Part shown: piece by piece, positions 33,732-57,800 of the stretch
Numbering within the stretch: the first letter of the stretch is position 1
Layout: each line of letters begins with the position of its first letter
NCBI GenBank assembly: GCA_965285935.1
Contig: OZ260661.1
Coordinates: 109,430,001-109,494,000, forward strand
Direction of reading: 5' to 3'
Origin: Ophelia neglecta
Lineage: Eukaryota
Length of the DNA: 64,000 nucleotides
Position numbers and translations under genes: made by a program
The notes under the pieces: generated by a model
What the model was told of the DNA's origin: nothing
The model's input: the letters and a program-made list of their open reading frames with translations, nothing else
The model's database searches: none

Positions 33732-33820
33732 ATGCTGGCCGTGGGAACTTGGATTTTACTTAGTCTTTCGTCCATACTGTTTGTCATCTATGTGGTCGTC
33801 CTGAAATACAGTCGAAAGCC
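33732..33820 (+). CDS. CYP7-clan cytochrome P450, coding exon 1 (N-terminal ER membrane anchor)
   Basis: The ATG at 33732 reads MLAVGTWILLSLSSILFVIYVVVLKYSRK(P), a hydrophobic anchor followed by basic residues. It ends in the donor CC|GTAAGT at 33821 (phase 2), which joins exon 2 in frame (CC+G=Pro). Too short for the ORF track. Confidence 0.9.
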
Positions 33821-35461
33821 GTAAGTTTATTTGAAATAGTTAATCTCATTTACACCTAAATAGTATCTTTCTACCTCGATAGAAAGGATAGAATACAGTT
33901 TACTATAAAAACTCTTGGCTATAAGAGAAAACGAGTACTCTTGCAACTGCTTCATTTCCTAGGAGTTAAAGAACCATGACATTTACATGGAATGTATTAA
34001 TTGCCGCCTAGACCTTCCGCTATCGATTACCAAGCCACGTTCCTGTAATACTATGTTGCCATTCATAAAGTTTAAGCCCGTTGTGATGACTGTCTGGGCT
34101 GGGCCCAAGGCAACCGCTAACCACGTGGGAACGCGATAGAACGAGCCGACAATGCTTAAGGCTAGATAAAGTCGCTTAGGTGTTGTTGTCAGCGTTTTGT
34201 AGCGTACTGGGTTAAAATATGCCGAGTCGCTGAAAGTCAATATTTGCCTTAAGTTTAATATTTTATAATTTTGTTGTATGTCCCATATTTTACTCTTTGC
34301 TACCCGATTACGTCATAACCGCCCAGTGTCTAGACTTCGATGATCTAATAGTCGATGAAGTGCTCTAGTATAGCCAAGGCTGCCATTAACTGTTTTTTTA
34401 ATAGTCAGTATAACCTAAAGGAAAGATGTCCCGACTTCTAATATGCAATAAACTGTAAGCATATATTAAAGGCAATTGATAGCACAATGGAAGGTTAAGC
34501 AATTTGATGTACCAGTATCGTCGCATGCTTCAGCATGTTCAGTGGTGAAATCATCCCACTTGATATTTGGTTTTGATCAATGAGAGAGTGTCTACCGGTT
34601 TGATCGTCTGCGCGGTGAAGTATGACATAGTCCCGGTAATAGGCTAATCCGGCGCCGGGCAACATGTATCGATATGCAATAAACTATTGTGTATTGGTCA
34701 ACTGACGGTTCCGTGTGGCCTTTACCTTCGATCTGAGCGCCATAGACCAGGAGACGGCAGGATAGCTTCTTTGTAGCGCTATCTTCTAGTATCTGGGACG
34801 CAAGGACATCAAAGTGATAGCACATGACAGCTAAGTAGCATGTCACTTGATGTATAAAAGTTCAATTGCCTGACTTGTGAACTTAGTACACAGTTCCTGA
34901 TGCAAAAACTATATTGGGCTCATGATCATGATGATGAAACAACCATCAAGATTGGCAACTGATCAAATAACTACACGACAAGGGGAATTCCCTCGCCAGT
35001 TTTATATACCGGACTACAAGCTGAACTAGCCTGATAACAACTGCGCTGTTTGCTCGTGCGCAGGTTTGAAGCTCGAAGGGTATTGATTTCTGGTGGCTAG
35101 AGTGTGGCAGCCAACTTATTTATGCGAGCGCGTACACCATCCCAGCCTGATTGCCACCGCCATGATCAATCATGATGACCTCATTCAGGTCATCAGACGC
35201 TGTTTGTAGCCGTCGTTTGGCGCTTTTTTTGCCAGATGGCGGCCTGCTATATCGTTAACATGTGATAATATAGCCCCCAGCTCGTCATTTACCGTCACTT
35301 AGCATAATTGGTCGCTTTGATCCTTTTCCCATAGCGACAAAGGATTGACTCACGTGTACATCCCTCCCAGCATAATAATATATAACGTTTAAGGCAATAA
35401 CCATTATGTTAATCTGGACATTTAAGCACAATTATTAAATGCAATTCTATATTTGTTACAG

Positions 35462-36369
35462 GAGAAGAGGTGAGCCACCAATAGTTAAAGGTAACCTTAT
35501 ATGGGGAAGTGGCCAAGACTTCTCTGAGCATGCTGTGGAATTCTTGCACCGCAGCCAGAAGACATACGGAGATGTTTTCACTATAAGACTCATCAACCAG
35601 TACCTGACAGTGATCATGGACCCTCACAGCTATGAGGCGGTAAGCAAGGAGAGGAATTTTGATTTCGATCCCATCCAGAAACAGGTCAATTGGAATGTGT
35701 TCAGCTTTATGCTCAAGGACTCAAAAAAGATGATCAAGGCTACTGCAAAGACGGTCCGCGGGCCTCACCTCGTTAATGCCATGCAGAGGTTCTGCGGAAA
35801 CTTGGACATCGCCTGCCAGCGCGTCCATCCCGACAACAACAACAGTAATGTCTGGGCCAGCGAAGGTTTGCGAATGCTCTGCGCAAAAACCATGTTTGAC
35901 GCCATCTTTAACACAGTGTTCGGGCGCGCCGACGGGCACGCTTTCTCCAGTGGAATGGTGTACAAGAACTTTGACATTTTCCACAAGTACTTCAACTATT
36001 TCTGGCTGGGACTTCCCAAAGCTCTATTCCCACCAGCAATGAAGGCTTTAGGAGAGCTTCTGGTGATGCCTGGTTCTGAGGACCTTATGGGACGTTCTGA
36101 CCTTTCTGGCTACATCCGCACTGCTATCGACAGCCTGAGGGAGCAAGGTCAAACCGAGGCTGACATCAAGGGCCACAACCTGGTCTACCTGCACGTCAAC
36201 TACAACACCTTTCGCTTGGCCTTCTGGGTGCTCTCAAACCTTCTGGAGGACGAGAAAGCCACGGCTGCTCTGAAAGACGAGATCGACACTGCCATCAATG
36301 CCAGGCTCGACGAGAGTACCAACAGCGCACAGTTCACACTCAAGGACATCGAAGAACTCAAAGTTCTTG
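35462..36369 (+). CDS. CYP7-clan cytochrome P450, coding exon 2
   Basis: Acceptor tttgttacAG|G. Encodes RRGEPPIVKG..YGDVFTIRL..MDPHSY..FDF, the N-terminal signature of CYP7A1/CYP8B1, and the I-helix ..NTFRLAFW. Donor G|GTGAGT at 36370 (phase 1). Lies within ORF 35439-36377. Confidence 0.96.
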
Positions 36370-37169: not shown

Positions 37170-37348
37170 ACTCCATACTGCAAGAGACAATGCGTCTATC
37201 CAGTGGCGTCTTCATGGTGCGCTACATCCAGGAAGACAAAGAATTCATAACTAGCGAAGGCAAGGCTCACTTGATGAGAGCCGGAGACAGAGTCGCCATC
37301 TATCCACCAGCCATACACAAAGACCCAGAAATATTCGAGGATCCATTG
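37170..37348 (+). CDS. CYP7-clan cytochrome P450, coding exon 3 (K-helix ExxR)
   Basis: Acceptor gtctttcAG|AC (G+AC=Asp). Encodes DSILQETMRLSS (ExxR) and RAGDRVAIYPPAIHKDPEIFEDPL. Donor TTG|GTGAGT at 37349 (phase 0). Confidence 0.96.
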
Positions 37349-37460: not shown

Positions 37461-37757
37461 GAGTTCAAGTATGACCGGTTCGTGAACAAAACTTTCTACA
37501 AGAATGGGAAGGCTATCAGTCACCCAGTGATGGCTTTCGGTTCTCTCTGTCCGGGAAAACGATACGCTCAAGCCCAGCTGAGATGGTTCGTCATGGAGAT
37601 GTTCACGCGGTTCGAGATGAGACTGCAAGATGGTGAGCATGCGCAGTATGCCTACCAATACCATGGCCATGAGGTACTGCCGCCCGTGAGAGATGTGAAC
37701 ATTGACTTCCGAACGATAGACAACGCGCCCCATTTACAGCTGTTGACTGATCTGTGA
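37461..37757 (+). CDS. CYP7-clan cytochrome P450, coding exon 4 (heme-thiolate Cys, stop)
   Basis: Acceptor tttttttcaccAG|GAG. Encodes EFKYDRF (CYP7-type meander), FYKNGK, MAFGSLCPGKRYA (Cys codon 37548-37550) and a C-terminal G..VLPP..DV segment. TGA ends at 37757. Confidence 0.96.
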   Translation, partial: EFKYDRFVNKTFYKNGKAISHPVMAFGSLCPGKRYAQAQLRWFVMEMFTRFEMRLQDGEHAQYAYQYHGHEVLPPVRDVNIDFRTIDNAPHLQLLTDL

Positions 37758-38206
37758 GCAAACACACCCCAATTACGTCAAGTGGCGAGACACGCAGGAA
37801 ATGCAAGCCATACAGAGGCGGGGTCTCAATAGATTTGGCTACCTCAAAATGAAATGGTAGGGCACACCTTTGATCCTTGAATTGCTTGAAACTGGATGAA
37901 GCCTTTTATCTGCCACGGGAGACGCTCTTTGCGCACGAAATTTCGGGTCGCAACCGTCCACAAAGACCTTTGTTTAGTGTATTTAGACTATTTTGGTATC
38001 ACGATATACATACTGTATAATCGGTATTACGATATACGTATATATAATCACTAATGGAGTTTGGGCGCAATGACTGGTTTCATTTGCCCCGCAGCTCCCT
38101 ATCACCCTTCATAAAGTATATTTATGTTCTAAGAGAGAATTGAATGCTGAAATATACGGTGCTCAAATTGCTTAAAATGAAAATTTATAATGAATAATGA
38201 TATTGT

Positions 38207-38386
38207 NNNNNNNNNNNNNNNNNNNNNNNNNNNNNNNNNNNNNNNNNNNNNNNNNNNNNNNNNNNNNNNNNNNNNNNNNNNNNNNNNNNNNNNNNNNNNN
38301 NNNNNNNNNNNNNNNNNNNNNNNNNNNNNNNNNNNNNNNNNNNNNNNNNNNNNNNNNNNNNNNNNNNNNNNNNNNNNNNNNNNNNN
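38207..38386. other. Assembly gap (180 N) within the probable 3' UTR region
   Basis: Run of N. No canonical AATAAA occurs between the stop codon (37757) and the gap, so the poly(A) site cannot be placed. Confidence 0.99.
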
Positions 38387-41300
38387 GACATATAATTTTA
38401 AAATTAATTCGTCTCTTAAGCACTAGTAATGGTCCTGGGCGTATTCGTTCTAGTTTCCCCATTCGCCAATATTATTAGAGAGTTTTGGATCACGGTTATT
38501 TCTTTAGTCATATTGAGGACACACATTCATAATTTTGAATGAACGAATCGCTATGTTGTATTCATTTACTGCAATGAGGCAATGTTTGCATTAAGATGTT
38601 CTCTTTCCCTGACTCTGACTTGATGGAGTAGAGATAATATTGCCAGCTCAGGGGTGACAGAGCGAAAGAGAGCGAGATAGGATGCAAGGTATATGTGTGT
38701 GAGTCAAATTGTACTTCCAAAGATCTGCTTCTCCAAGTTGATCGATAATGATGTTATTGTTTAATAAGGCAAAAGTGCTCCTTATAAACATGTACATAAC
38801 TAGTTAGTTCAACCTTGCCACATAGTCTGTTTGGTTAGTGTTAATCGACTGTTGACAGTTTCTACTCGGTCGAGATTTGCCTGTTTGAGGTGGTTGTTCC
38901 TCGACTTGCTTTGTGCCCGACATCTTTCCAAGTCAACCTGGTGTTGAATGTAAATAGTTTTTCCTTCTAAAATCCAAGCAGTTTATGGCTTAATTAAATT
39001 GACTTGTAAACGTGATGACCTGAAAATGAATATTGTTGAAAAGAAATAAGATTTTTATTGGGGTTGCTGTTTTTGCTATAATGAAGGAATGTACATTTAA
39101 CTCATTATTAAAAGGCGGCAATCGTTACTATGCATGACTGTGCAGAGGTCGTAAGGTCATTGTTGTCGCCTGTTCGACCTACACCGAGAATAGCACGTTG
39201 GTCATCTGCCCCCTCGCATCATGTATGATTAGTAACCAAACACTGTTGCTCACGCCTATATATCAAACAAGTGCGGGGTACCAAAAGGGCGGCAGAGGAC
39301 CAGCCCCCGAGCGCAACGTGTTCGCCTTCTGCCTAACCCGAACCTAGCTCGTGTAACCTAGCTGCATGTCGGCCACCTTTTTTTGGCCGGACCTAAGCAC
39401 GGGAACACGACTCAGCGGCTGTTCTCTGTTGACGGATAATTGCTGCCGATTGAACAGCTTTGAGAACTATTTGTTATTGAGGCGTTTTTGTTGTGGTCAT
39501 GTACTTTGAAACTGAAGGCCTTATTGTACATATTAAGAAGGTGCAAACCTAACTTAATTCTGGGAATTAACTCAGATCTGCTTGGTTTATTACAGCATTA
39601 AGCTAAATCTGGTTGCTGATAGCAAAAAGTCTAACTAAGAACTGTCACTTTTAACTCGCTCTCTGAACTAATGGATGTCCAGAAAAGAATCTCAGCCCAT
39701 TTGTGTTCAAATTTTGGAGAAACTATTGAGTTAAAATCATGCACTTTCAAATTCTACATCTATTATGTCTATTAGCTACATTTACCCTGTACATTTCGAT
39801 TGGATGTTAAACATATTTATTTAAGTTATTTGAAACCACCATTATTGATATATTATTTATTTTAATTTTGTAAGAAGAAACAACTGATGTATACAACGAG
39901 TAAGTTATACTGCCAAATTGTACCGTGTTATTTTCATATGTTCAAGAATTCTTTGCCCTTAGAATAATGAATTATAATACAGTATAAATATCTAACAATA
40001 GAATTAGTTGATTAGGTCAAATAATTTATTTTTTATTTATGGTAAGTTATCGCATAACCATACTGAGAACAAGTGAATTATGTATAATAGAACAGACACT
40101 TAATAAACATCCATTAAAACTTTATGTACTTGCTTGCTGTTTCAATTCTGCCTGCTAACTAAGAAGTTAACCAAATATTAAAAATTGCAGAATATCAAAC
40201 CTTTATAACAGTTTGTCATAGTATTGCATTTGGGAAAAATCGTTCTGCTGAACAGTTCTATATACCTTCTACTTTGATACGTTGCATAAGAAAGAGATAC
40301 GTTAAGGTTCGTAGCATATGAAGATTTAGTATATATTAATTGCACACATTTCTTGTCGTTCTAATATGCGAATAACATAGCTTAAACAGAAAAATACAAA
40401 CAAAAAAGTCCGACACCCATGCTTGTTTCACGTTTTCAATATTATCTGCAAATGACGCACATAAAGAAAAGTAAACACTCTTAATACTTAATTTTTACGC
40501 TTAAATACTTCATTCAGAATATGAAAAAGTCTTATAGATAGTTGAGGGAGGGAGAGGAGGGAAAGCGTATGTTTATGTAACCTTTTTATGTAGTCTAACC
40601 CAACCGCTGCTTATTGCACTGTGACAAAATGCGTTTATCGGTATATATGTTCTGAAAATATAATGGGCTACTGACACGTTTCTTACTATGTGTTTGTACT
40701 TTAAATCAAGGAAGTTGACAAATACACTTCGTGTGCCAAAAGTTCCTGTGGCAAAATTAAAATATAATACTTAGGACAGATAAGGGTCTGTCGAAGGTGG
40801 CCTCGATTGCAAAAATTTCACGCATGGACCACATAGTGTGAAAAATTTGATTTTCTACACTAAATGGGAACGGAGATTGTGTTCAGACCTTTTGTGTCCA
40901 GACATTTTTTATTATTCGGCCAATGTGCGAAAATAATCTCTGTTAATTTCCGACCAAATTTCACGCCGAAAAAATATTCTGGTTAACAGAATCTTTCAAA
41001 GGGAATTTTAGTGTTTGATATTTATTTGAAAACCTGGAATCAAAATATGGCACATTATCATGGAATTTCTTAGATTTGATGCAGTTCCGTTTGGCAATAA
41101 TCAAAAACTTTTTTATTTATATGGCAATAAAAAATACTCGCTAAAGTGCCATTTTCACAACTGAAAAGTCTGCTGGATGTCTTAAGCGTCGTAGGAAATA
41201 CGTTGAAAACTGGGAGCCTACAGGTTTGGGAAAGAATTTTTCAGTACATGGAGCGTAGGGGCTTTAAACTAAATAAAAACATCCTAATATATATTGACAC

Positions 41301-54678: not shown

Positions 54679-54800
54679 CAGCGGCATAAAGAGTGGGGGG
54701 GGGGGAGGGGGGGGGGCAAAACATATGATGACCCCCCACTTTTTTAAGTGGGAGGCACCCCCCCCCCCCCCCCCCGACCACCCCTCTTCCTACGCAACTG
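54679..54800. mobile_element. Short hAT-like MITE (CAGTGGCGTA...TACGCCACTG type)
   Basis: cagcggcata...(G)n caaaacatatga...(C)n...tcctacgcaactg. A related right end (ccaacgccactg, ~55046) shares ggggcaaaacatatga. Confidence 0.5.
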
Positions 54801-57800
54801 TACGTTGATCTTTACTAGCCAAAAAACATTGAATAAATAACATTATTGGCTGTGTAATGGGTTTGTAAATAACCTGCCCACAGGTAACTATATGATTATG
54901 GTCAAGCCAACTGAGGACAGACGCTTCTGACCACTGCTGCAATACACCATTGTGAGAGGGCAAAAAGTGAGAGGGTCATCATGAAAAAGTGTGGGGGGGG
55001 CAAAACATATGAAGCCCCCCCCCCCCCTTCGCTTCCAACGCCACTGCCGTATGAACCACATGAAGCTGTGCGACCCGTGGCCGGATGTGACCCCAGCATA
55101 TGACCCCGTGATCTGTACATTGATTTATGATTTCTGCTTCTTAAAGTTATTCCGTCTAAACTTGTCTTCTTTATGTGAAATGTTCCTGGTATAAATGTCG
55201 ACACAATGACTACATGTAAATGTCATTTGCGTTTTAATGAATTCGTACCACCGTCGGCAAAACAATAGCAAATTAACACCTTCTATCCAGCTTTTATCTT
55301 TTGAATTGTTTAAAAATTGGGGCCGTTAGGAAAGGCGCATATTTACCTAGGCCCTTGTACACTTTGTGGGGGCCGGACGAAACTTGACAAAATTATCAAC
55401 TTCAATCTGACGTCATATCAATAGGGCCGAGTCAAAAGTCAGAATACAGATTTTATTTCTGGTCTTATTTTAAACGGATAATCCCGTTCAAATTTCACTA
55501 AATTATTAGTCCAAGAAGCAACATGACTTTAATGAGCAAATGATTGTTTCCTAAAGAAATTACCTCCCATTAGCAGTCGGCATCCAATTAATGTCCATTC
55601 ACCACTGTTTTGTACTTTGCACAAGGGAATAGCAAGTTGTAATTATTAAAACAATATCATGGATTCGGATATGGCACATATACTGCAAGTTATATCAAAT
55701 TTATTTATTTTTAATTATTTATTCCGTTTCAAAAATATTATCATATAGTGAATCTGACATCAATTTTTATGTGCCTTCATGTTCAAGACGTGTCGTGGTG
55801 ACTTCAGTCCATTTAGGCCTACTGGATTTCTTCTGATTAACCACTTTGCATTGTCTGCCGGGTATACAATTCCATATTTCTTAGTAGGGTTTTGATTCTA
55901 GAAAATGCATACATTATCGAAACATCTCAATCAATGCTCGAAAGGGCAGATTTTGCTCCAACCATGCGAACGTCTCTGGCCGATATAAAGGCCTATGCAA
56001 ACCCAATATTATCTAATACGATCGGGTCACAACGCATACGATATACGGGGTGTGTGAGCGAATAGGACATAATCATAATGGTGGTTCTCTGGGGGAGGTG
56101 TTGGTAAGAAATTACTCCTAGGGTCTTAGGAGATTTCTTAGCAATTTATGGTCATAGTATTCAATTTCACCTTTTTCGCTTGTCACCATGGCAACGGAAT
56201 CAAGCACCTTTCACGAGACTAACTTGTTTAAAAAAAATAGGGCATTAAATGATCATACATGTATATGATTACTAAAGGAACTGCGTTTCAGACATCGCAA
56301 AAAAAAATTCGCACCATGTTAAGTATTAATTTATCAATTTAGACCATAGTAATAGTTAAAACAGGACAATCTCCTTACTTTCTCAAAAGGTCTGAAATCT
56401 AAGGGGTTGTTAGGGTAAGGTTTTCCTCATCGGAATATCCAACGGAAAAAGGGAAGTTTAAGTCGAATTTAGCGAATAAATTGGATAGAGGGCAAAATGG
56501 TTTAATAATGCTTTATTAATAACACGTGAAACTCGAACGTTGTCTCTTTTTTCTACTTTTTGCTTTTAATACAATTGATATCATGTTTTCCTGTTATCTT
56601 ACGTTGTATGTTTTGTATAGCATTAGATCCTTACGTCTCACCACAAATGTCTCACCTTTCAACACCCGAATTTAACTAAGAAAGTATGAGTTTGTAAATG
56701 TCCATGCATCTCGCCGCCTGCCCATGGGCATATACATTGTAGGGCTAAATAAACATATCTTTTTTTATACAATTCTACAAAGTTTCTAAAAGGGTGGTCC
56801 CACCAAGCCATGAAATTATATAGATATATCTGTATTTGTATAAAACACAAAAAGAAGCCAAGCATGTAAACATATGATGACCCCCCACTTTTTTAAGTGG
56901 GAGGCACCCCCCCCCCCCCCCGACCACCCCTCTTCCTACGCAACTGTACGTTGATCTTTACTAGCCAAAAAACATTGAATAAATAACATTATTGGCTGTG
57001 TAATGGGTTTGTAAATAACCTGCCCACAGGTAACTATATGATTATGGTCAAGCCAACTGAGGACAGACGCTTCTGACCACTGCTGCAATACACCATTGTG
57101 AGAGGGCAAAAAGTGAGAGGGTCATCATGAAAAAGTGTGGGGGGGGCAAAACATATGAAGCCCCCCCCCCCCCCCCTTCGCTTCCAACGCCACTGCCGTA
57201 TGAACCACATGAAGCTGTGCGACCCGTGGCCGGATGTGACCCCAGCATATGACCCCGTGATCTGTACATTGATTTATGATTTCTGCTTCTTAAAGTTATT
57301 CCGTCTAAACTTGTCTTCTTTATGTGAAATGTTCCTGGTATAATGATTATGGTCAAGCCAACTGAGGACAGACGCTTCTGACCACTGCTGCAATACACCA
57401 TTGTGAGAGGGCAAAAAGTGAGAGGGTCATCATGAAAAAGTGTGGGGGGGGGCAAAACATATGAAGCCCCCCCCCCCCCCGCTTCCAACGCCACTGCCGT
57501 ATGAACCACATGAAGCTGTGCGACCCGTGGCCGGATGTGACCCCAGCATATGACCCCGTGATCTGTACATTGATTTATGATTTCTGCTTCTTAAAGTTAT
57601 TCCGTCTAAACTTGTCTTCTTTATGTGAAATGTTCCTGGTATAAATGTCGACACAATGACTACATGTAAATGTCATTTGCGTTTTAATGAATTCGTACCA
57701 CCGTCGGCAAAACAATAGCAAATTAACACCTTCTATCCAGCTTTTATCTTTTGAATTGTTTAAAAATTGGGGCCGTTAGGAAAGGCGCATATTTACCTAG

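What the first reader, a model, noticed from the sequence alone, without database searches (positions are those of the whole stretch)
36171..36227. P450 I-helix reads HVNYNT: His sits where the conserved Ala over the heme belongs
Seen: GHNLVYLHVNYNTFRLAFW (aa 267-285). Established: the canonical motif is AGxD/ET(T). Human CYP7A1 has HLVVLWASQANTIPATFW, with Asn replacing the catalytic Thr, as in PTGIS and CYP8B1. An ungapped alignment keeps N-T and F-W but puts His274 at the Ala position and Tyr277 at the acid position, and loses the CYP7/8 Trp. Inference: the distal pocket is remodelled. The enzyme may not be a sterol 7-alpha-hydroxylase. It could be a peroxide-rearranging enzyme (PTGIS/CYP74-like chemistry), a His-assisted peroxygenase, or a His/Cys-ligated heme protein. 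Together with the short Cys loop, this suggests an invertebrate P450 subfamily with different chemistry.
Basis: partly seen in the sequence, partly recalled or inferred. Interest (0 to 1): 0.78.

Follow-up and report, generated by a model that had tools for sequence, protein, structure and literature searches.

The report
Spiralian P450 with rebuilt heme pocket
This is an intact worm gene for a cytochrome P450 (the CYP3067 family) in which both sides of the heme pocket have been rebuilt and then kept unchanged across six animal phyla, so it probably does not work like an ordinary sterol hydroxylase, although its chemistry is untested.

Summary
The gene is the ortholog of Capitella CYP3067A1, a clan-7 P450 named in 2014, when its 'peculiar' gaps in the I-helix and heme loop were noted.

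New here:
- L-H-V-N-Y is invariant in every relative that covers it (about 113 close hits plus 18 divergent ones), across annelids, nemerteans, brachiopods, molluscs, flatworms and an orthonectid. It is the most conserved stretch of the protein.
- All other clan-7 P450s have L-W-A-x-x-(A/G/S)-N-T. This clade has one residue fewer. Counting back from the Asn, His takes the Ala slot; some alignments put it under the 'low-ceiling' Trp. Both slots lie directly over the heme iron.
- The His always co-occurs with the 3-residue-shorter Cys loop, in a clade with a single origin.
- The Trp-Asp-Arg triad of CYP7/8 is replaced by His, His and Tyr, and His-Glu appears at the SRS-6 tip.

The gene is not a CYP7A1 ortholog. 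I could not measure a His-Fe distance. Peroxide-type chemistry, a Cys/His-ligated heme and an ordinary monooxygenase all remain open.

The parts
33732..33820 (+). Exon 1: start codon and N-terminal membrane anchor (29 codons plus 2 bases of a split Pro codon)
   Evidence: tblastn of the Capitella and Paralvinella N-termini (59% and 48% identity). ATG at 33732 and donor GT at 33821.
35462..36369 (+). Exon 2: Pro-rich hinge (RRGEPP) through the I-helix, residues 30-333
   Evidence: Pfam PF00067 E=1e-11. 61-65% identical to annelid orthologs. AG/GT borders.
37170..37348 (+). Exon 3: K-helix ExxR (ETMR, nt 37184-37195) and SRS-5 (SGVFMVR)
   Evidence: Pfam PF00067 E=7.6e-6. 68-70% identical to orthologs. 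Coordinates.
37461..37757 (+). Exon 4: meander FKYDRF, Cys loop, L-helix, beta-4 hairpin, stop TGA at 37755-37757
36171..36227 (+). I-helix segment G267-W285, the finding itself. It contains the invariant L273-H274-V275-N276-Y277 and N278-T279.
   Evidence: Invariant in family alignments A1 and A2. Most conserved window of the protein.
36192..36194 (+). His274 codon (CAC), 4 residues before Asn278, which is the equivalent of the catalytic Thr
   Evidence: Conserved in every His-type sequence seen, including the flatworm, Aplysia and orthonectid divergent members.
35979..35993 (+). F-helix FHKYF. His204 aligns with Asp210 of CYP8B1, the partner of the 'low-ceiling' Trp.
   Evidence: The HMMER profile alignment and MAFFT agree. 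His is present in 96 of 96 family members matched by the motif. Triad described in PMC9463588.
35658..35702 (+). B'-helix / SRS-1 block FDFDPIQKQVNWNVF, nearly invariant and polar. Gln and Asn sit where CYP8B1 has Ala103 and Val107.
   Evidence: Mapped by hand from the alignment and the ligand-shell list in PMC9463588.
37536..37556 (+). Heme-thiolate loop FGSLCPG (Cys422), 3 residues shorter than FGSGATICPG of CYP7A1
   Evidence: Listed as 'AFGS...LCPG' for CYP3067A1 in PMC4229089.
37659..37673 (+). Beta-4 hairpin tip (SRS-6) YHGHE. Tyr459 aligns with Arg479 of CYP8B1, His462 with Phe482 (ligand shell) and Glu463 with Gly483.
   Evidence: G-H-E is present in 32 of 33 family members that reach it.

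Best explanation
The locus is the intact, single-copy ortholog of CYP3067A1, a membrane-anchored clan-7 heme-thiolate P450 of spiralian animals.

In the ancestor of this clade the heme pocket was rebuilt on both faces:
- The I-helix kink lost one residue, and L-W-A-S-Q-(A/G)-N-T became L-H-V-N-Y-N-T.
- The Trp-Asp-Arg 'low-ceiling' triad became His, His and Tyr.
- The SRS-6 tip gained His-Glu.
- SRS-1 became polar.
- The Cys loop lost three residues.
The result has since been kept almost unchanged.

Shown: identity, conservation, single origin and the coupling of the two features.

Inferred: His274 lines the space directly above the heme iron, so the small-residue groove that normally holds iron-bound O2 is gone. 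The most likely mechanism is therefore that the enzyme does not run the usual reductase/O2 hydroxylation cycle. Instead it uses the thiolate heme on a substrate that already carries an O-O bond (a fatty-acid hydroperoxide, an endoperoxide, or H2O2 as co-substrate). His274, perhaps with Glu463 and Asn278, would act as the distal acid-base or hydrogen-bonding group, as in peroxidases, chloroperoxidase, PGIS and CYP74.

The confidence given is for this mechanism. The identity part is about 0.97.
For: Identity:
- Pfam p450 hits on three exons.
- PDB profile search: CYP7A1 1e-83, CYP8B1 4e-72, PGIS 4e-60.
- AF2 model of the Capitella ortholog, pLDDT 90.8. It matches CYP7A1 at Z 41.2, PGIS at Z 40.8 and CYP8B1 at Z 39.9.
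- P0014 matches the published CYP3067A1 motif positions: ESFR 344, FKYDR 400, NT 286, AFGS...LCPG 424.
- The window is 59-70% identical to it, exon by exon.

Constraint:
- L-H-V-N-Y is invariant and is the most conserved block.
- Relatives occur as intron-free transcript-sized contigs, and Capitella has EST support.

Coupling and single origin:
- Every L-H-[VI] protein has the short loop and every L-W-A protein has the normal loop.
- The His-type group is one side of a branch with SH-aLRT 100, also when the I-helix and Cys-loop columns are removed.

Position over the iron:
- CYP7A1 Ala285 tolerates only Gly; A285V, A285T and A285R are inactive (PMC10502461).
- CYP8B1 Trp281 is 'directly over the heme iron', 8.2 A away (PMC9463588).
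- Either alignment puts His or Val on the Ala slot.

Precedent for O-O chemistry with a polar distal residue in self-sufficient P450s: PMC13049297.

The animal's own genome has lipoxygenase genes, so hydroperoxide substrates exist (weak support).
Against: - No coordinates of the model were available, so the orientation of His274 and its distance from the iron are unmeasured.
- The Cys-loop region of the model has low confidence (pLDDT 64).
- PGIS, the one clan-7 enzyme known to work on an O-O bond, keeps the ordinary W-A-T-Q-G-N helix. The family's changes are therefore not a PGIS signature.
- Distal Asn residues are dispensable in several such enzymes.
- The one-residue deletion may reshape the helix so that O2 still fits.
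- There is no biochemical or expression data for this species: no RNA runs were found.
- Gene neighbours give no hint.
Confidence: 0.42

Rival explanations
1. It is an ordinary reductase- and O2-dependent monooxygenase. The His, Asn, Tyr, Gln and Glu residues only bind a polar substrate, for example an oxidised lipid, an oxysterol or a hormone precursor. The one-residue deletion re-forms a usable O2 site.
For: - All clan-7 monooxygenases already lack the acid-alcohol pair and use Asn.
- ExxR, the meander, the Cys ligand, the membrane anchor and the Pro-rich hinge are typical of microsomal P450s.
- The very high conservation of the SRS regions fits a strict substrate.
Against: - In either alignment a residue larger than Ala occupies the Ala285 slot, and A285V, A285T and A285R abolish CYP7A1 activity.
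- The proximal loop that tunes the thiolate and faces the reductase is three residues shorter in the whole clade.
Confidence: 0.3
2. His274 binds the heme iron as the sixth ligand, giving a Cys/His low-spin heme. The protein would then be a latent enzyme opened by substrate or reduction, or a heme-based redox or gas sensor rather than a catalyst.
For: - In P450 BM3 the same slot (Ala264, four residues before Thr268) changed to His or Lys ligates the iron and inactivates the enzyme (PMC11900375).
- Thiolate hydrogen bonding is thought to separate sensor from enzyme heme-thiolates (PMC12223480 abstract), and the Cys loop is altered here.
- The His is absolutely invariant.
Against: - The extreme conservation of all substrate-recognition regions looks like an enzyme with a defined substrate.
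- If His takes the Trp slot, it would sit about 8 A from the iron, too far to ligate.
- My literature search found no natural P450 with a distal His ligand.
Confidence: 0.16
3. The distal His204, His274, His462 and Glu463 cluster holds a second metal next to the heme, or His274 is covalently linked to the heme, as the Glu in the same slot is in the CYP4 family.
For: - By alignment, three invariant or near-invariant His and one invariant Glu replace residues that touch each other in CYP8B1.
- CYP4 enzymes carry Glu in the slot four residues before Thr (EGHDTT in the Capitella table). That this Glu forms the covalent link is my own knowledge.
Against: - The case is purely alignment-based, and no geometry is available.
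- The F-helix His and the SRS-6 His are lost in some divergent members that keep His274.
- No P450 with such a site is known.
Confidence: 0.04
4. It is an artefact: a pseudogene, an assembly error or a mis-joined gene model.
For: In 2014 the Capitella authors asked whether the gapped gene is fully functional.
Against: - The reading frame is open across four exons with canonical splice sites.
- The gene is single-copy.
- The same motifs occur in more than 125 sequences from six phyla.
- Relatives have transcript-derived contigs and ESTs.
Confidence: 0.01

Closest known systems
CYP3067A1 of Capitella teleta (Dejong & Wilson 2014, PMC4229089)
   Same: Same family and, by the usual identity rule, the same subfamily: 59-70% identical exon by exon. 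The I-helix core LHVNYNT, the heme loop FGSLCPG, ExxR and the FKYDR meander are identical. Both are clan 7.
   Different: A different annelid species. The 2014 paper recorded the motifs only as 'gaps' and doubted the gene's function. It did not note the His, the conservation across phyla, or the replaced triad.
CYP7A1, CYP7B1, CYP8B1 and CYP39A1 (vertebrate clan-7 sterol hydroxylases)
   Same: Same fold (Z about 40, rmsd 2.3-2.6 A). Shared GEPP hinge, Asn at the catalytic-Thr position, N-T...F-W, FKYDR meander, CPG and ILPP..D.
   Different: They have L-W-A-x-x-(A/G)-N-T (one residue more), the Trp-Asp/Asn-Arg triad, a normal-length Cys loop and a hydrophobic SRS-1. The window's clade is separated from all of them by a branch with full support, so it is not an ortholog despite automatic 'CYP7A1-like' names.
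Prostacyclin synthase (CYP8A1)
   Same: Clan 7 and an equally good structural match (Z 40.8). Asn is close to the iron. It works on an O-O bond without a reductase, which is the kind of chemistry proposed here.
   Different: PGIS keeps the ordinary W-A-T-Q-G-N helix and a full-length Cys loop. It groups with CYP8B1 in the tree, not with this clade.
P450 BM3 A264H, A264K and A264E mutants (engineered)
   Same: A large ligating residue in the slot four residues before the catalytic Thr, directly over the iron.
   Different: These are laboratory mutants of a bacterial clan-unrelated enzyme. His and Lys ligate the iron and abolish activity. Here the His is natural and invariant, and it comes with a helix deletion whose geometry is unknown.
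Chloroperoxidase, unspecific peroxygenases, and P450 peroxygenases (CYP152; Thr-to-Glu mutants)
   Same: A thiolate heme with a distal acid-base residue (Glu, with His or Arg) that splits peroxide. This is a 'works like' candidate, because the clade has invariant His and Glu in the distal pocket.
   Different: Chloroperoxidase and unspecific peroxygenases have unrelated folds. CYP152 uses the substrate carboxylate with Arg. No activity data exist for CYP3067.

Membership tests
Cytochrome P450 superfamily (PF00067) | Significant match to the Pfam p450 profile and the P450 fold | tested here: met
   Exons 2, 3 and 4 score E = 1e-11, 7.6e-6 and 1e-3. The ortholog model matches CYP7A1 at Z 41.2.
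Cytochrome P450 superfamily (PF00067) | K-helix ExxR and the meander motif | tested here: met
   ETMR at nt 37184-37195 and FKYDRF at nt 37464-37481. Both are invariant in the family.
Cytochrome P450 superfamily (PF00067) | Cys ligand in an FxxGxxxCxG loop of standard length | tested here: inconclusive
   Cys422 with a flanking F-G and P-G is present and invariant. The loop is three residues shorter than in every other clan-7 hit.
Cytochrome P450 superfamily (PF00067) | I-helix (A/G)Gx(D/E)T(T/S) oxygen-binding motif | tested here: not met
   The gene reads H-V-N-Y-N-T. The acid-alcohol pair is already absent in all of clan 7.
CYP3067 family (clan 7) | At least 40% identity to CYP3067A1 (at least 55% for the same subfamily). 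The nomenclature rule is from my own knowledge. | tested here: met
   59%, 61%, 70% and 65% identity over exons 1-4 to P0014. P0014 was identified as CYP3067A1 by four published motif positions.
CYP3067 family (clan 7) | Shared I-helix deletion and 3-residue heme-loop deletion, and grouping with CYP3067A1 in a tree | tested here: met
   The tree places the annelid orthologs with Capitella at SH-aLRT 95-99, and the whole His-type group on one branch at 100. The window protein itself was not in the tree, because its exons were not joined.
CYP7A1 orthologs (cholesterol 7-alpha-hydroxylase) | Grouping with vertebrate CYP7A1 | tested here: not met
   CYP7A1, 7B1, 8B1-like, PGIS and amphioxus sequences all fall on the other side of the fully supported branch.
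CYP7A1 orthologs (cholesterol 7-alpha-hydroxylase) | Trp284 and a small residue (Ala285) at the I-helix kink, both needed for activity | tested here: not met
   The Trp is absent, and His or Val occupies the Ala slot. Functional requirement: PMC10502461 and PMC9463588.
CYP7A1 orthologs (cholesterol 7-alpha-hydroxylase) | Sterol 7-alpha-hydroxylase activity | not testable with these tools
   Needs recombinant enzyme assays.
Prostacyclin synthase / self-sufficient O-O-cleaving P450s | Turnover of PGH2 or hydroperoxides without reductase or O2 | not testable with these tools
   Only indirect hints: a polar distal pocket, an altered proximal loop, and lipoxygenase genes in the same genome.
Prostacyclin synthase / self-sufficient O-O-cleaving P450s | Grouping with CYP8A1 | tested here: not met
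   Frog PGIS groups with CYP8B1-like sequences, away from the His-type clade.

The most novel reading that the evidence does not exclude
CYP3067 enzymes would be the first natural P450s with a histidine directly over the heme iron that acts as a reversible sixth ligand (a Cys/His ligand switch). Alternatively, the histidine would work with the neighbouring invariant His, His and Glu as a peroxidase-like or second-metal site. This would amount to a heme-thiolate protein class with chemistry outside the P450 monooxygenase cycle, conserved across Spiralia.
Probability: 0.18. Interest if true: 0.85.

Novelty: new variant of a known kind. Interest (0 to 1): 0.6.

Why it matters
P450 specialists treat the small Ala/Gly pair at the I-helix kink and the length of the Cys loop as near-universal. 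Here a whole lineage breaks both rules at once. It is single-copy in this genome and kept from flatworms and an orthonectid parasite to cephalopods, and the new arrangement is more strongly conserved than any other part of the protein.

That makes three things directly testable:
- whether nature has made the counterpart of the BM3 A264H ligand-switch mutant;
- what an orphan spiralian P450, auto-annotated as 'CYP7A1-like', '7-alpha-hydroxycholest-4-en-3-one 12-alpha-hydroxylase-like', '25-hydroxycholesterol 7-alpha-hydroxylase-like' or 'prostacyclin synthase-like', really does;
- whether spiralians have their own P450 route for lipid peroxides or another conserved signal molecule.

It also shows that these database names should not be used to infer bile-acid-like sterol metabolism in molluscs and annelids.

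Tried and rejected
- Expression in this species: the run search found only DNA-type holders from one study and no RNA.
- Gene neighbours: the eight longest ORFs elsewhere in the window have no Pfam match, so there is no cluster hint.
- Paralogs in the same genome: a six-frame search with exon 2 found only the gene itself. This is a low-sensitivity test.
- ESM Atlas look-up of the Capitella protein returned only generic P450, CYP7A1 and PGIS clusters.
- Literature: 'CYP3067' occurs in one paper only. A mollusc 'CYP7A1-like' search returned noise. Searches for natural distal-His P450s found none.
- His-Fe distance: the structure tools return no coordinates and no heme, so it could not be measured.
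- Complex prediction was not used, because no protein-protein claim is made.
- Joining the four exons into one protein for searches, folding or the tree was left out. All searches used single exons by reference, and the fold is that of the Capitella ortholog P0014.
- Rejected reading: 'Asn instead of Thr points to PGIS-like chemistry'. This Asn is general to clan 7.
- Rejected reading: a simple point substitution of Ala to His. There is a one-residue deletion, and the placement of the gap is arbitrary.

Full report
**Observation.** window:36171-36227 on the + strand translates exactly to GHNLVYLHVNYNTFRLAFW. The segment lies in a spliced eukaryotic gene.
- Exon 1 (33732-33820) encodes a 29-residue hydrophobic anchor. 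It is 59% identical to the Capitella N-terminus.
- Exon 2 (35462-36369) runs from the RRGEPP hinge to the end of the I-helix region.
- Exon 3 (37170-37348) carries ExxR.
- Exon 4 (37461-37757) carries the FKYDRF meander, the Cys loop and the stop codon.
- Every intron starts with GT and ends with AG. The coding length is 1473 nt, or 490 residues.
- Every search used one exon by reference, and the structural work was done on a full-length ortholog returned by the database.

**What the gene is.**
- Three exons match Pfam p450.
- Against solved structures, exon 2 alone finds CYP8B1, prostacyclin synthase and CYP7A1.
- A profile of 33 full-length relatives finds CYP7A1 (1e-83), CYP8B1 (4e-72) and PGIS (about 1e-59), far ahead of CYP51. 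This places the gene in clan 7.
- The word-based protein search returned 161 relatives. The named ones are annelid (Paralvinella 65%, Capitella 61%), nemertean, brachiopod and molluscan proteins. They are auto-annotated as 'CYP7A1-like', '12-alpha-hydroxylase-like', '25-hydroxycholesterol 7-alpha-hydroxylase-like' or 'prostacyclin synthase-like'.
- The Capitella protein P0014 is the published CYP3067A1. Its ESFR at 344, FKYDR at 400, NT at 286 and AFGS...LCPG at 424 coincide with the paper's tables.
- That 2014 paper placed it in clan 7 near the CYP7s. It called the gaps in the I-helix and heme loop 'peculiar', asked whether the gene is functional, and reported EST support.
- 'CYP3067' appears in no other paper of the library.
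- The window gene is single-copy in its 762-Mb genome by a six-frame search.

**Conservation.**
- In a 20-sequence alignment spanning four phyla, L-H-V-N-Y-N-T-F is invariant.
- Among the 120 listed homologues, all of the roughly 113 that reach this region carry L-H-V-(N/S)-Y. The rest are truncated before it.
- GHNLVYLHVNYN is the most conserved 12-residue window of the family (0.952 against a mean column identity of 0.644). LHVNY is the longest run of invariant columns.
- Several relatives are full-length ORFs on contigs barely longer than the ORF (for example 476 aa on 1527 nt). These are spliced transcripts, since the gene here has three introns.
- The motif is therefore real and under strong selection. 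It is not an assembly or annotation artefact.

**How it differs from the rest of clan 7.** An exhaustive profile search of 1.84 billion cluster representatives gave 248 hits below 1e-30. I extracted the I-helix and Cys-loop columns from the best 150 and from a MAFFT alignment of 51 sequences. Two classes appear, with no intermediates.
- All others read L-W-A-x-x-(A/G/S)-N-T and have a normal loop, FGxGxxxCPGR. These include fish, lungfish and lamprey CYP7A1, frog, ray and hamster CYP7B1, CYP8B1-like proteins, frog PGIS, amphioxus, an amoebozoan, and a second, canonical clan-7 gene of the annelid Owenia (names).
- The CYP3067-type sequences read L-H-(V/I)-x-x-N, one residue fewer, and all have the loop shortened by three residues: (F/Y/H)-G-x-L-C.
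- The His-type class also includes two Macrostomum (flatworm) proteins, a divergent Aplysia paralog, an Intoshia (orthonectid) protein and two intron-free metagenome genes of unknown origin.
- In a maximum-likelihood tree the His-type group is one side of a branch with SH-aLRT 100. This holds when the I-helix and Cys-loop columns are removed.
- The two features therefore arose once, together or in close succession. The clade is not nested in CYP7, CYP8 or PGIS.
- Because this is a single event, co-evolution cannot be tested statistically.

**Where the His sits.**
MAFFT agrees by deleting the Trp.
- Against CYP8B1, CYP7B1 and lungfish CYP7A1, HMMER puts His under the Trp and Val under the Ala.
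- The placement of the gap cannot be settled from sequence. Both slots matter.
- In CYP7A1, Ala285 is the first residue of the I-helix kink, next to the iron and the oxidised carbon. A285G keeps about 50% activity, and A285V, A285T and A285R are dead (PMC10502461).
- In CYP8B1 the Trp is 'directly over the heme iron' at 8.2 A. It acts as a low ceiling, conserved in CYP7A1, 7B1, 8A1 and 39A1 (PMC9463588).
- Counting within the protein itself, His274 is four residues, one helical turn, before Asn278, the equivalent of the catalytic Thr.
- In P450 BM3 that slot is Ala264. The A264H and A264K mutants ligate the iron and are inactive (PMC11900375).
- So in either register a residue bulkier than Ala (His or Val) fills the Ala slot, and an invariant His lies over the iron.
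- The AF2 model of CYP3067A1 is confident (pLDDT 90.8) and has a continuous I-helix at 270-300. The Cys-loop block scores only 64.
- The model superposes on CYP7A1, PGIS and CYP8B1 equally well, at Z 41.2, 40.8 and 39.9.
- The tools give no coordinates and no heme.

**Further remodelling found here.**
- CYP8B1 has a hydrogen-bonded triad: Trp281 (I-helix), Asp210 (F-helix) and Arg479 (beta-4). It is conserved in related enzymes.
- Both the HMMER profile alignment and MAFFT place Asp210 opposite an invariant His (window His204, in FHKYF; 96 of 96 members).
- Arg479 falls opposite Tyr.
- The ligand-shell residue Phe482 falls opposite His, and Gly483 opposite an invariant Glu (window Y459-H-G-H-E463; G-H-E in 32 of 33 members).
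- In SRS-1, Ala103 and Val107 of CYP8B1 correspond to invariant Gln and Asn. I mapped these by hand using the residue list.
- The distal pocket is thus predicted to hold three His, a Glu, two Asn and a Tyr, where sterol hydroxylases are hydrophobic.
- This rests on alignment, not on measured geometry.

**Mechanism.**
- Shown: an intact, selected heme-thiolate P450 whose distal and proximal heme surroundings were rebuilt once and then kept.
- Inferred: the O2 groove of ordinary P450s is occupied and the reductase-facing loop is altered, so the usual cycle is unlikely.
- My preferred reading (0.42) is chemistry on a pre-formed O-O bond, with His, possibly together with Glu and Asn, as the distal catalyst. 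This is analogous to the self-sufficient P450s reviewed in PMC13049297 and to heme-thiolate peroxygenases.
- The genome encodes lipoxygenases, which makes such substrates available but proves nothing.
- Rivals: an ordinary monooxygenase for a polar substrate (0.30), a Cys/His six-coordinate heme acting as a latent enzyme or sensor (0.16), a second-metal or covalent-heme site (0.04), and an artefact (0.01).

**Comparison and novelty.**
- The gene is a member of the CYP3067 family, which is already named and whose motif 'gaps' have been noted.
- As far as the searched library shows, these points are not in the literature: the invariant His, the one-residue helix deletion relative to all other clan-7 proteins, its strict coupling to the short Cys loop, the replaced triad, and the range across six phyla.
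- I rate it a new variant of a known kind, with interest 0.6.

**Limits.**
- There is no RNA evidence for this species.
- The window protein itself was neither folded nor placed in the tree, because its exons were not joined.
- 'Confined to Spiralia' rests on the named hits only.
- A run of N near 38.2-38.4 kb was left as it is.

Noticed in passing
window ~38200-38390: A run of N (translated as X in the ORF list) lies just downstream of the gene's 3' end. It is an assembly gap or masked stretch. It was left untouched.
   Followed up: no
window 54761-55293 and 56907-57743: There are direct repeats about 2.15 kb apart. A 267-nt unit is repeated at 100% identity. A 300-nt unit occurs in three copies, at 96% and 71% identity to the reference. 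This looks like a tandemly duplicated or transposon-derived segment.
   Followed up: partly
P0121 (Owenia fusiformis, 923 aa): This annotated protein contains two almost identical canonical clan-7 P450 domains (LWASQGNT type) in tandem. It is probably two recent tandem duplicates fused by the gene model. Owenia also has a separate His-type gene (P0049), so the two types coexist in one annelid.
   Followed up: partly
P0006 (Paralvinella palmiformis), alignment A1 columns ~130-200: The annotated ortholog has an Asn-rich low-complexity stretch where all relatives have conserved sequence. This is likely a gene-model or assembly error in that record.
   Followed up: no
L002:3001-4353 and L003:3001-4353 (P0127): A divergent His-type P450 (I-helix IHVHVNA, loop FGTLCIG) is encoded without introns on 23-39 kb metagenome scaffolds. 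The host organism is unknown, and the neighbouring genes have no Pfam hits.
   Followed up: partly
G000:C9:32474767-32475426, C2:82570021-82571385, C8:33635471-33635668: The same genome carries at least three lipoxygenase-like loci (PF00305, E down to 1.7e-32). A fourth match, at C7:80221495, is interrupted by stops.
   Followed up: no
P0181 (Intoshia linei, partial 411 aa): The orthonectid parasite, known for a very reduced genome (my own knowledge), keeps a His-type clan-7 P450 (I-helix ILHVSNN). This hints at an important function. The row sits on a very long branch in the tree.
   Followed up: partly
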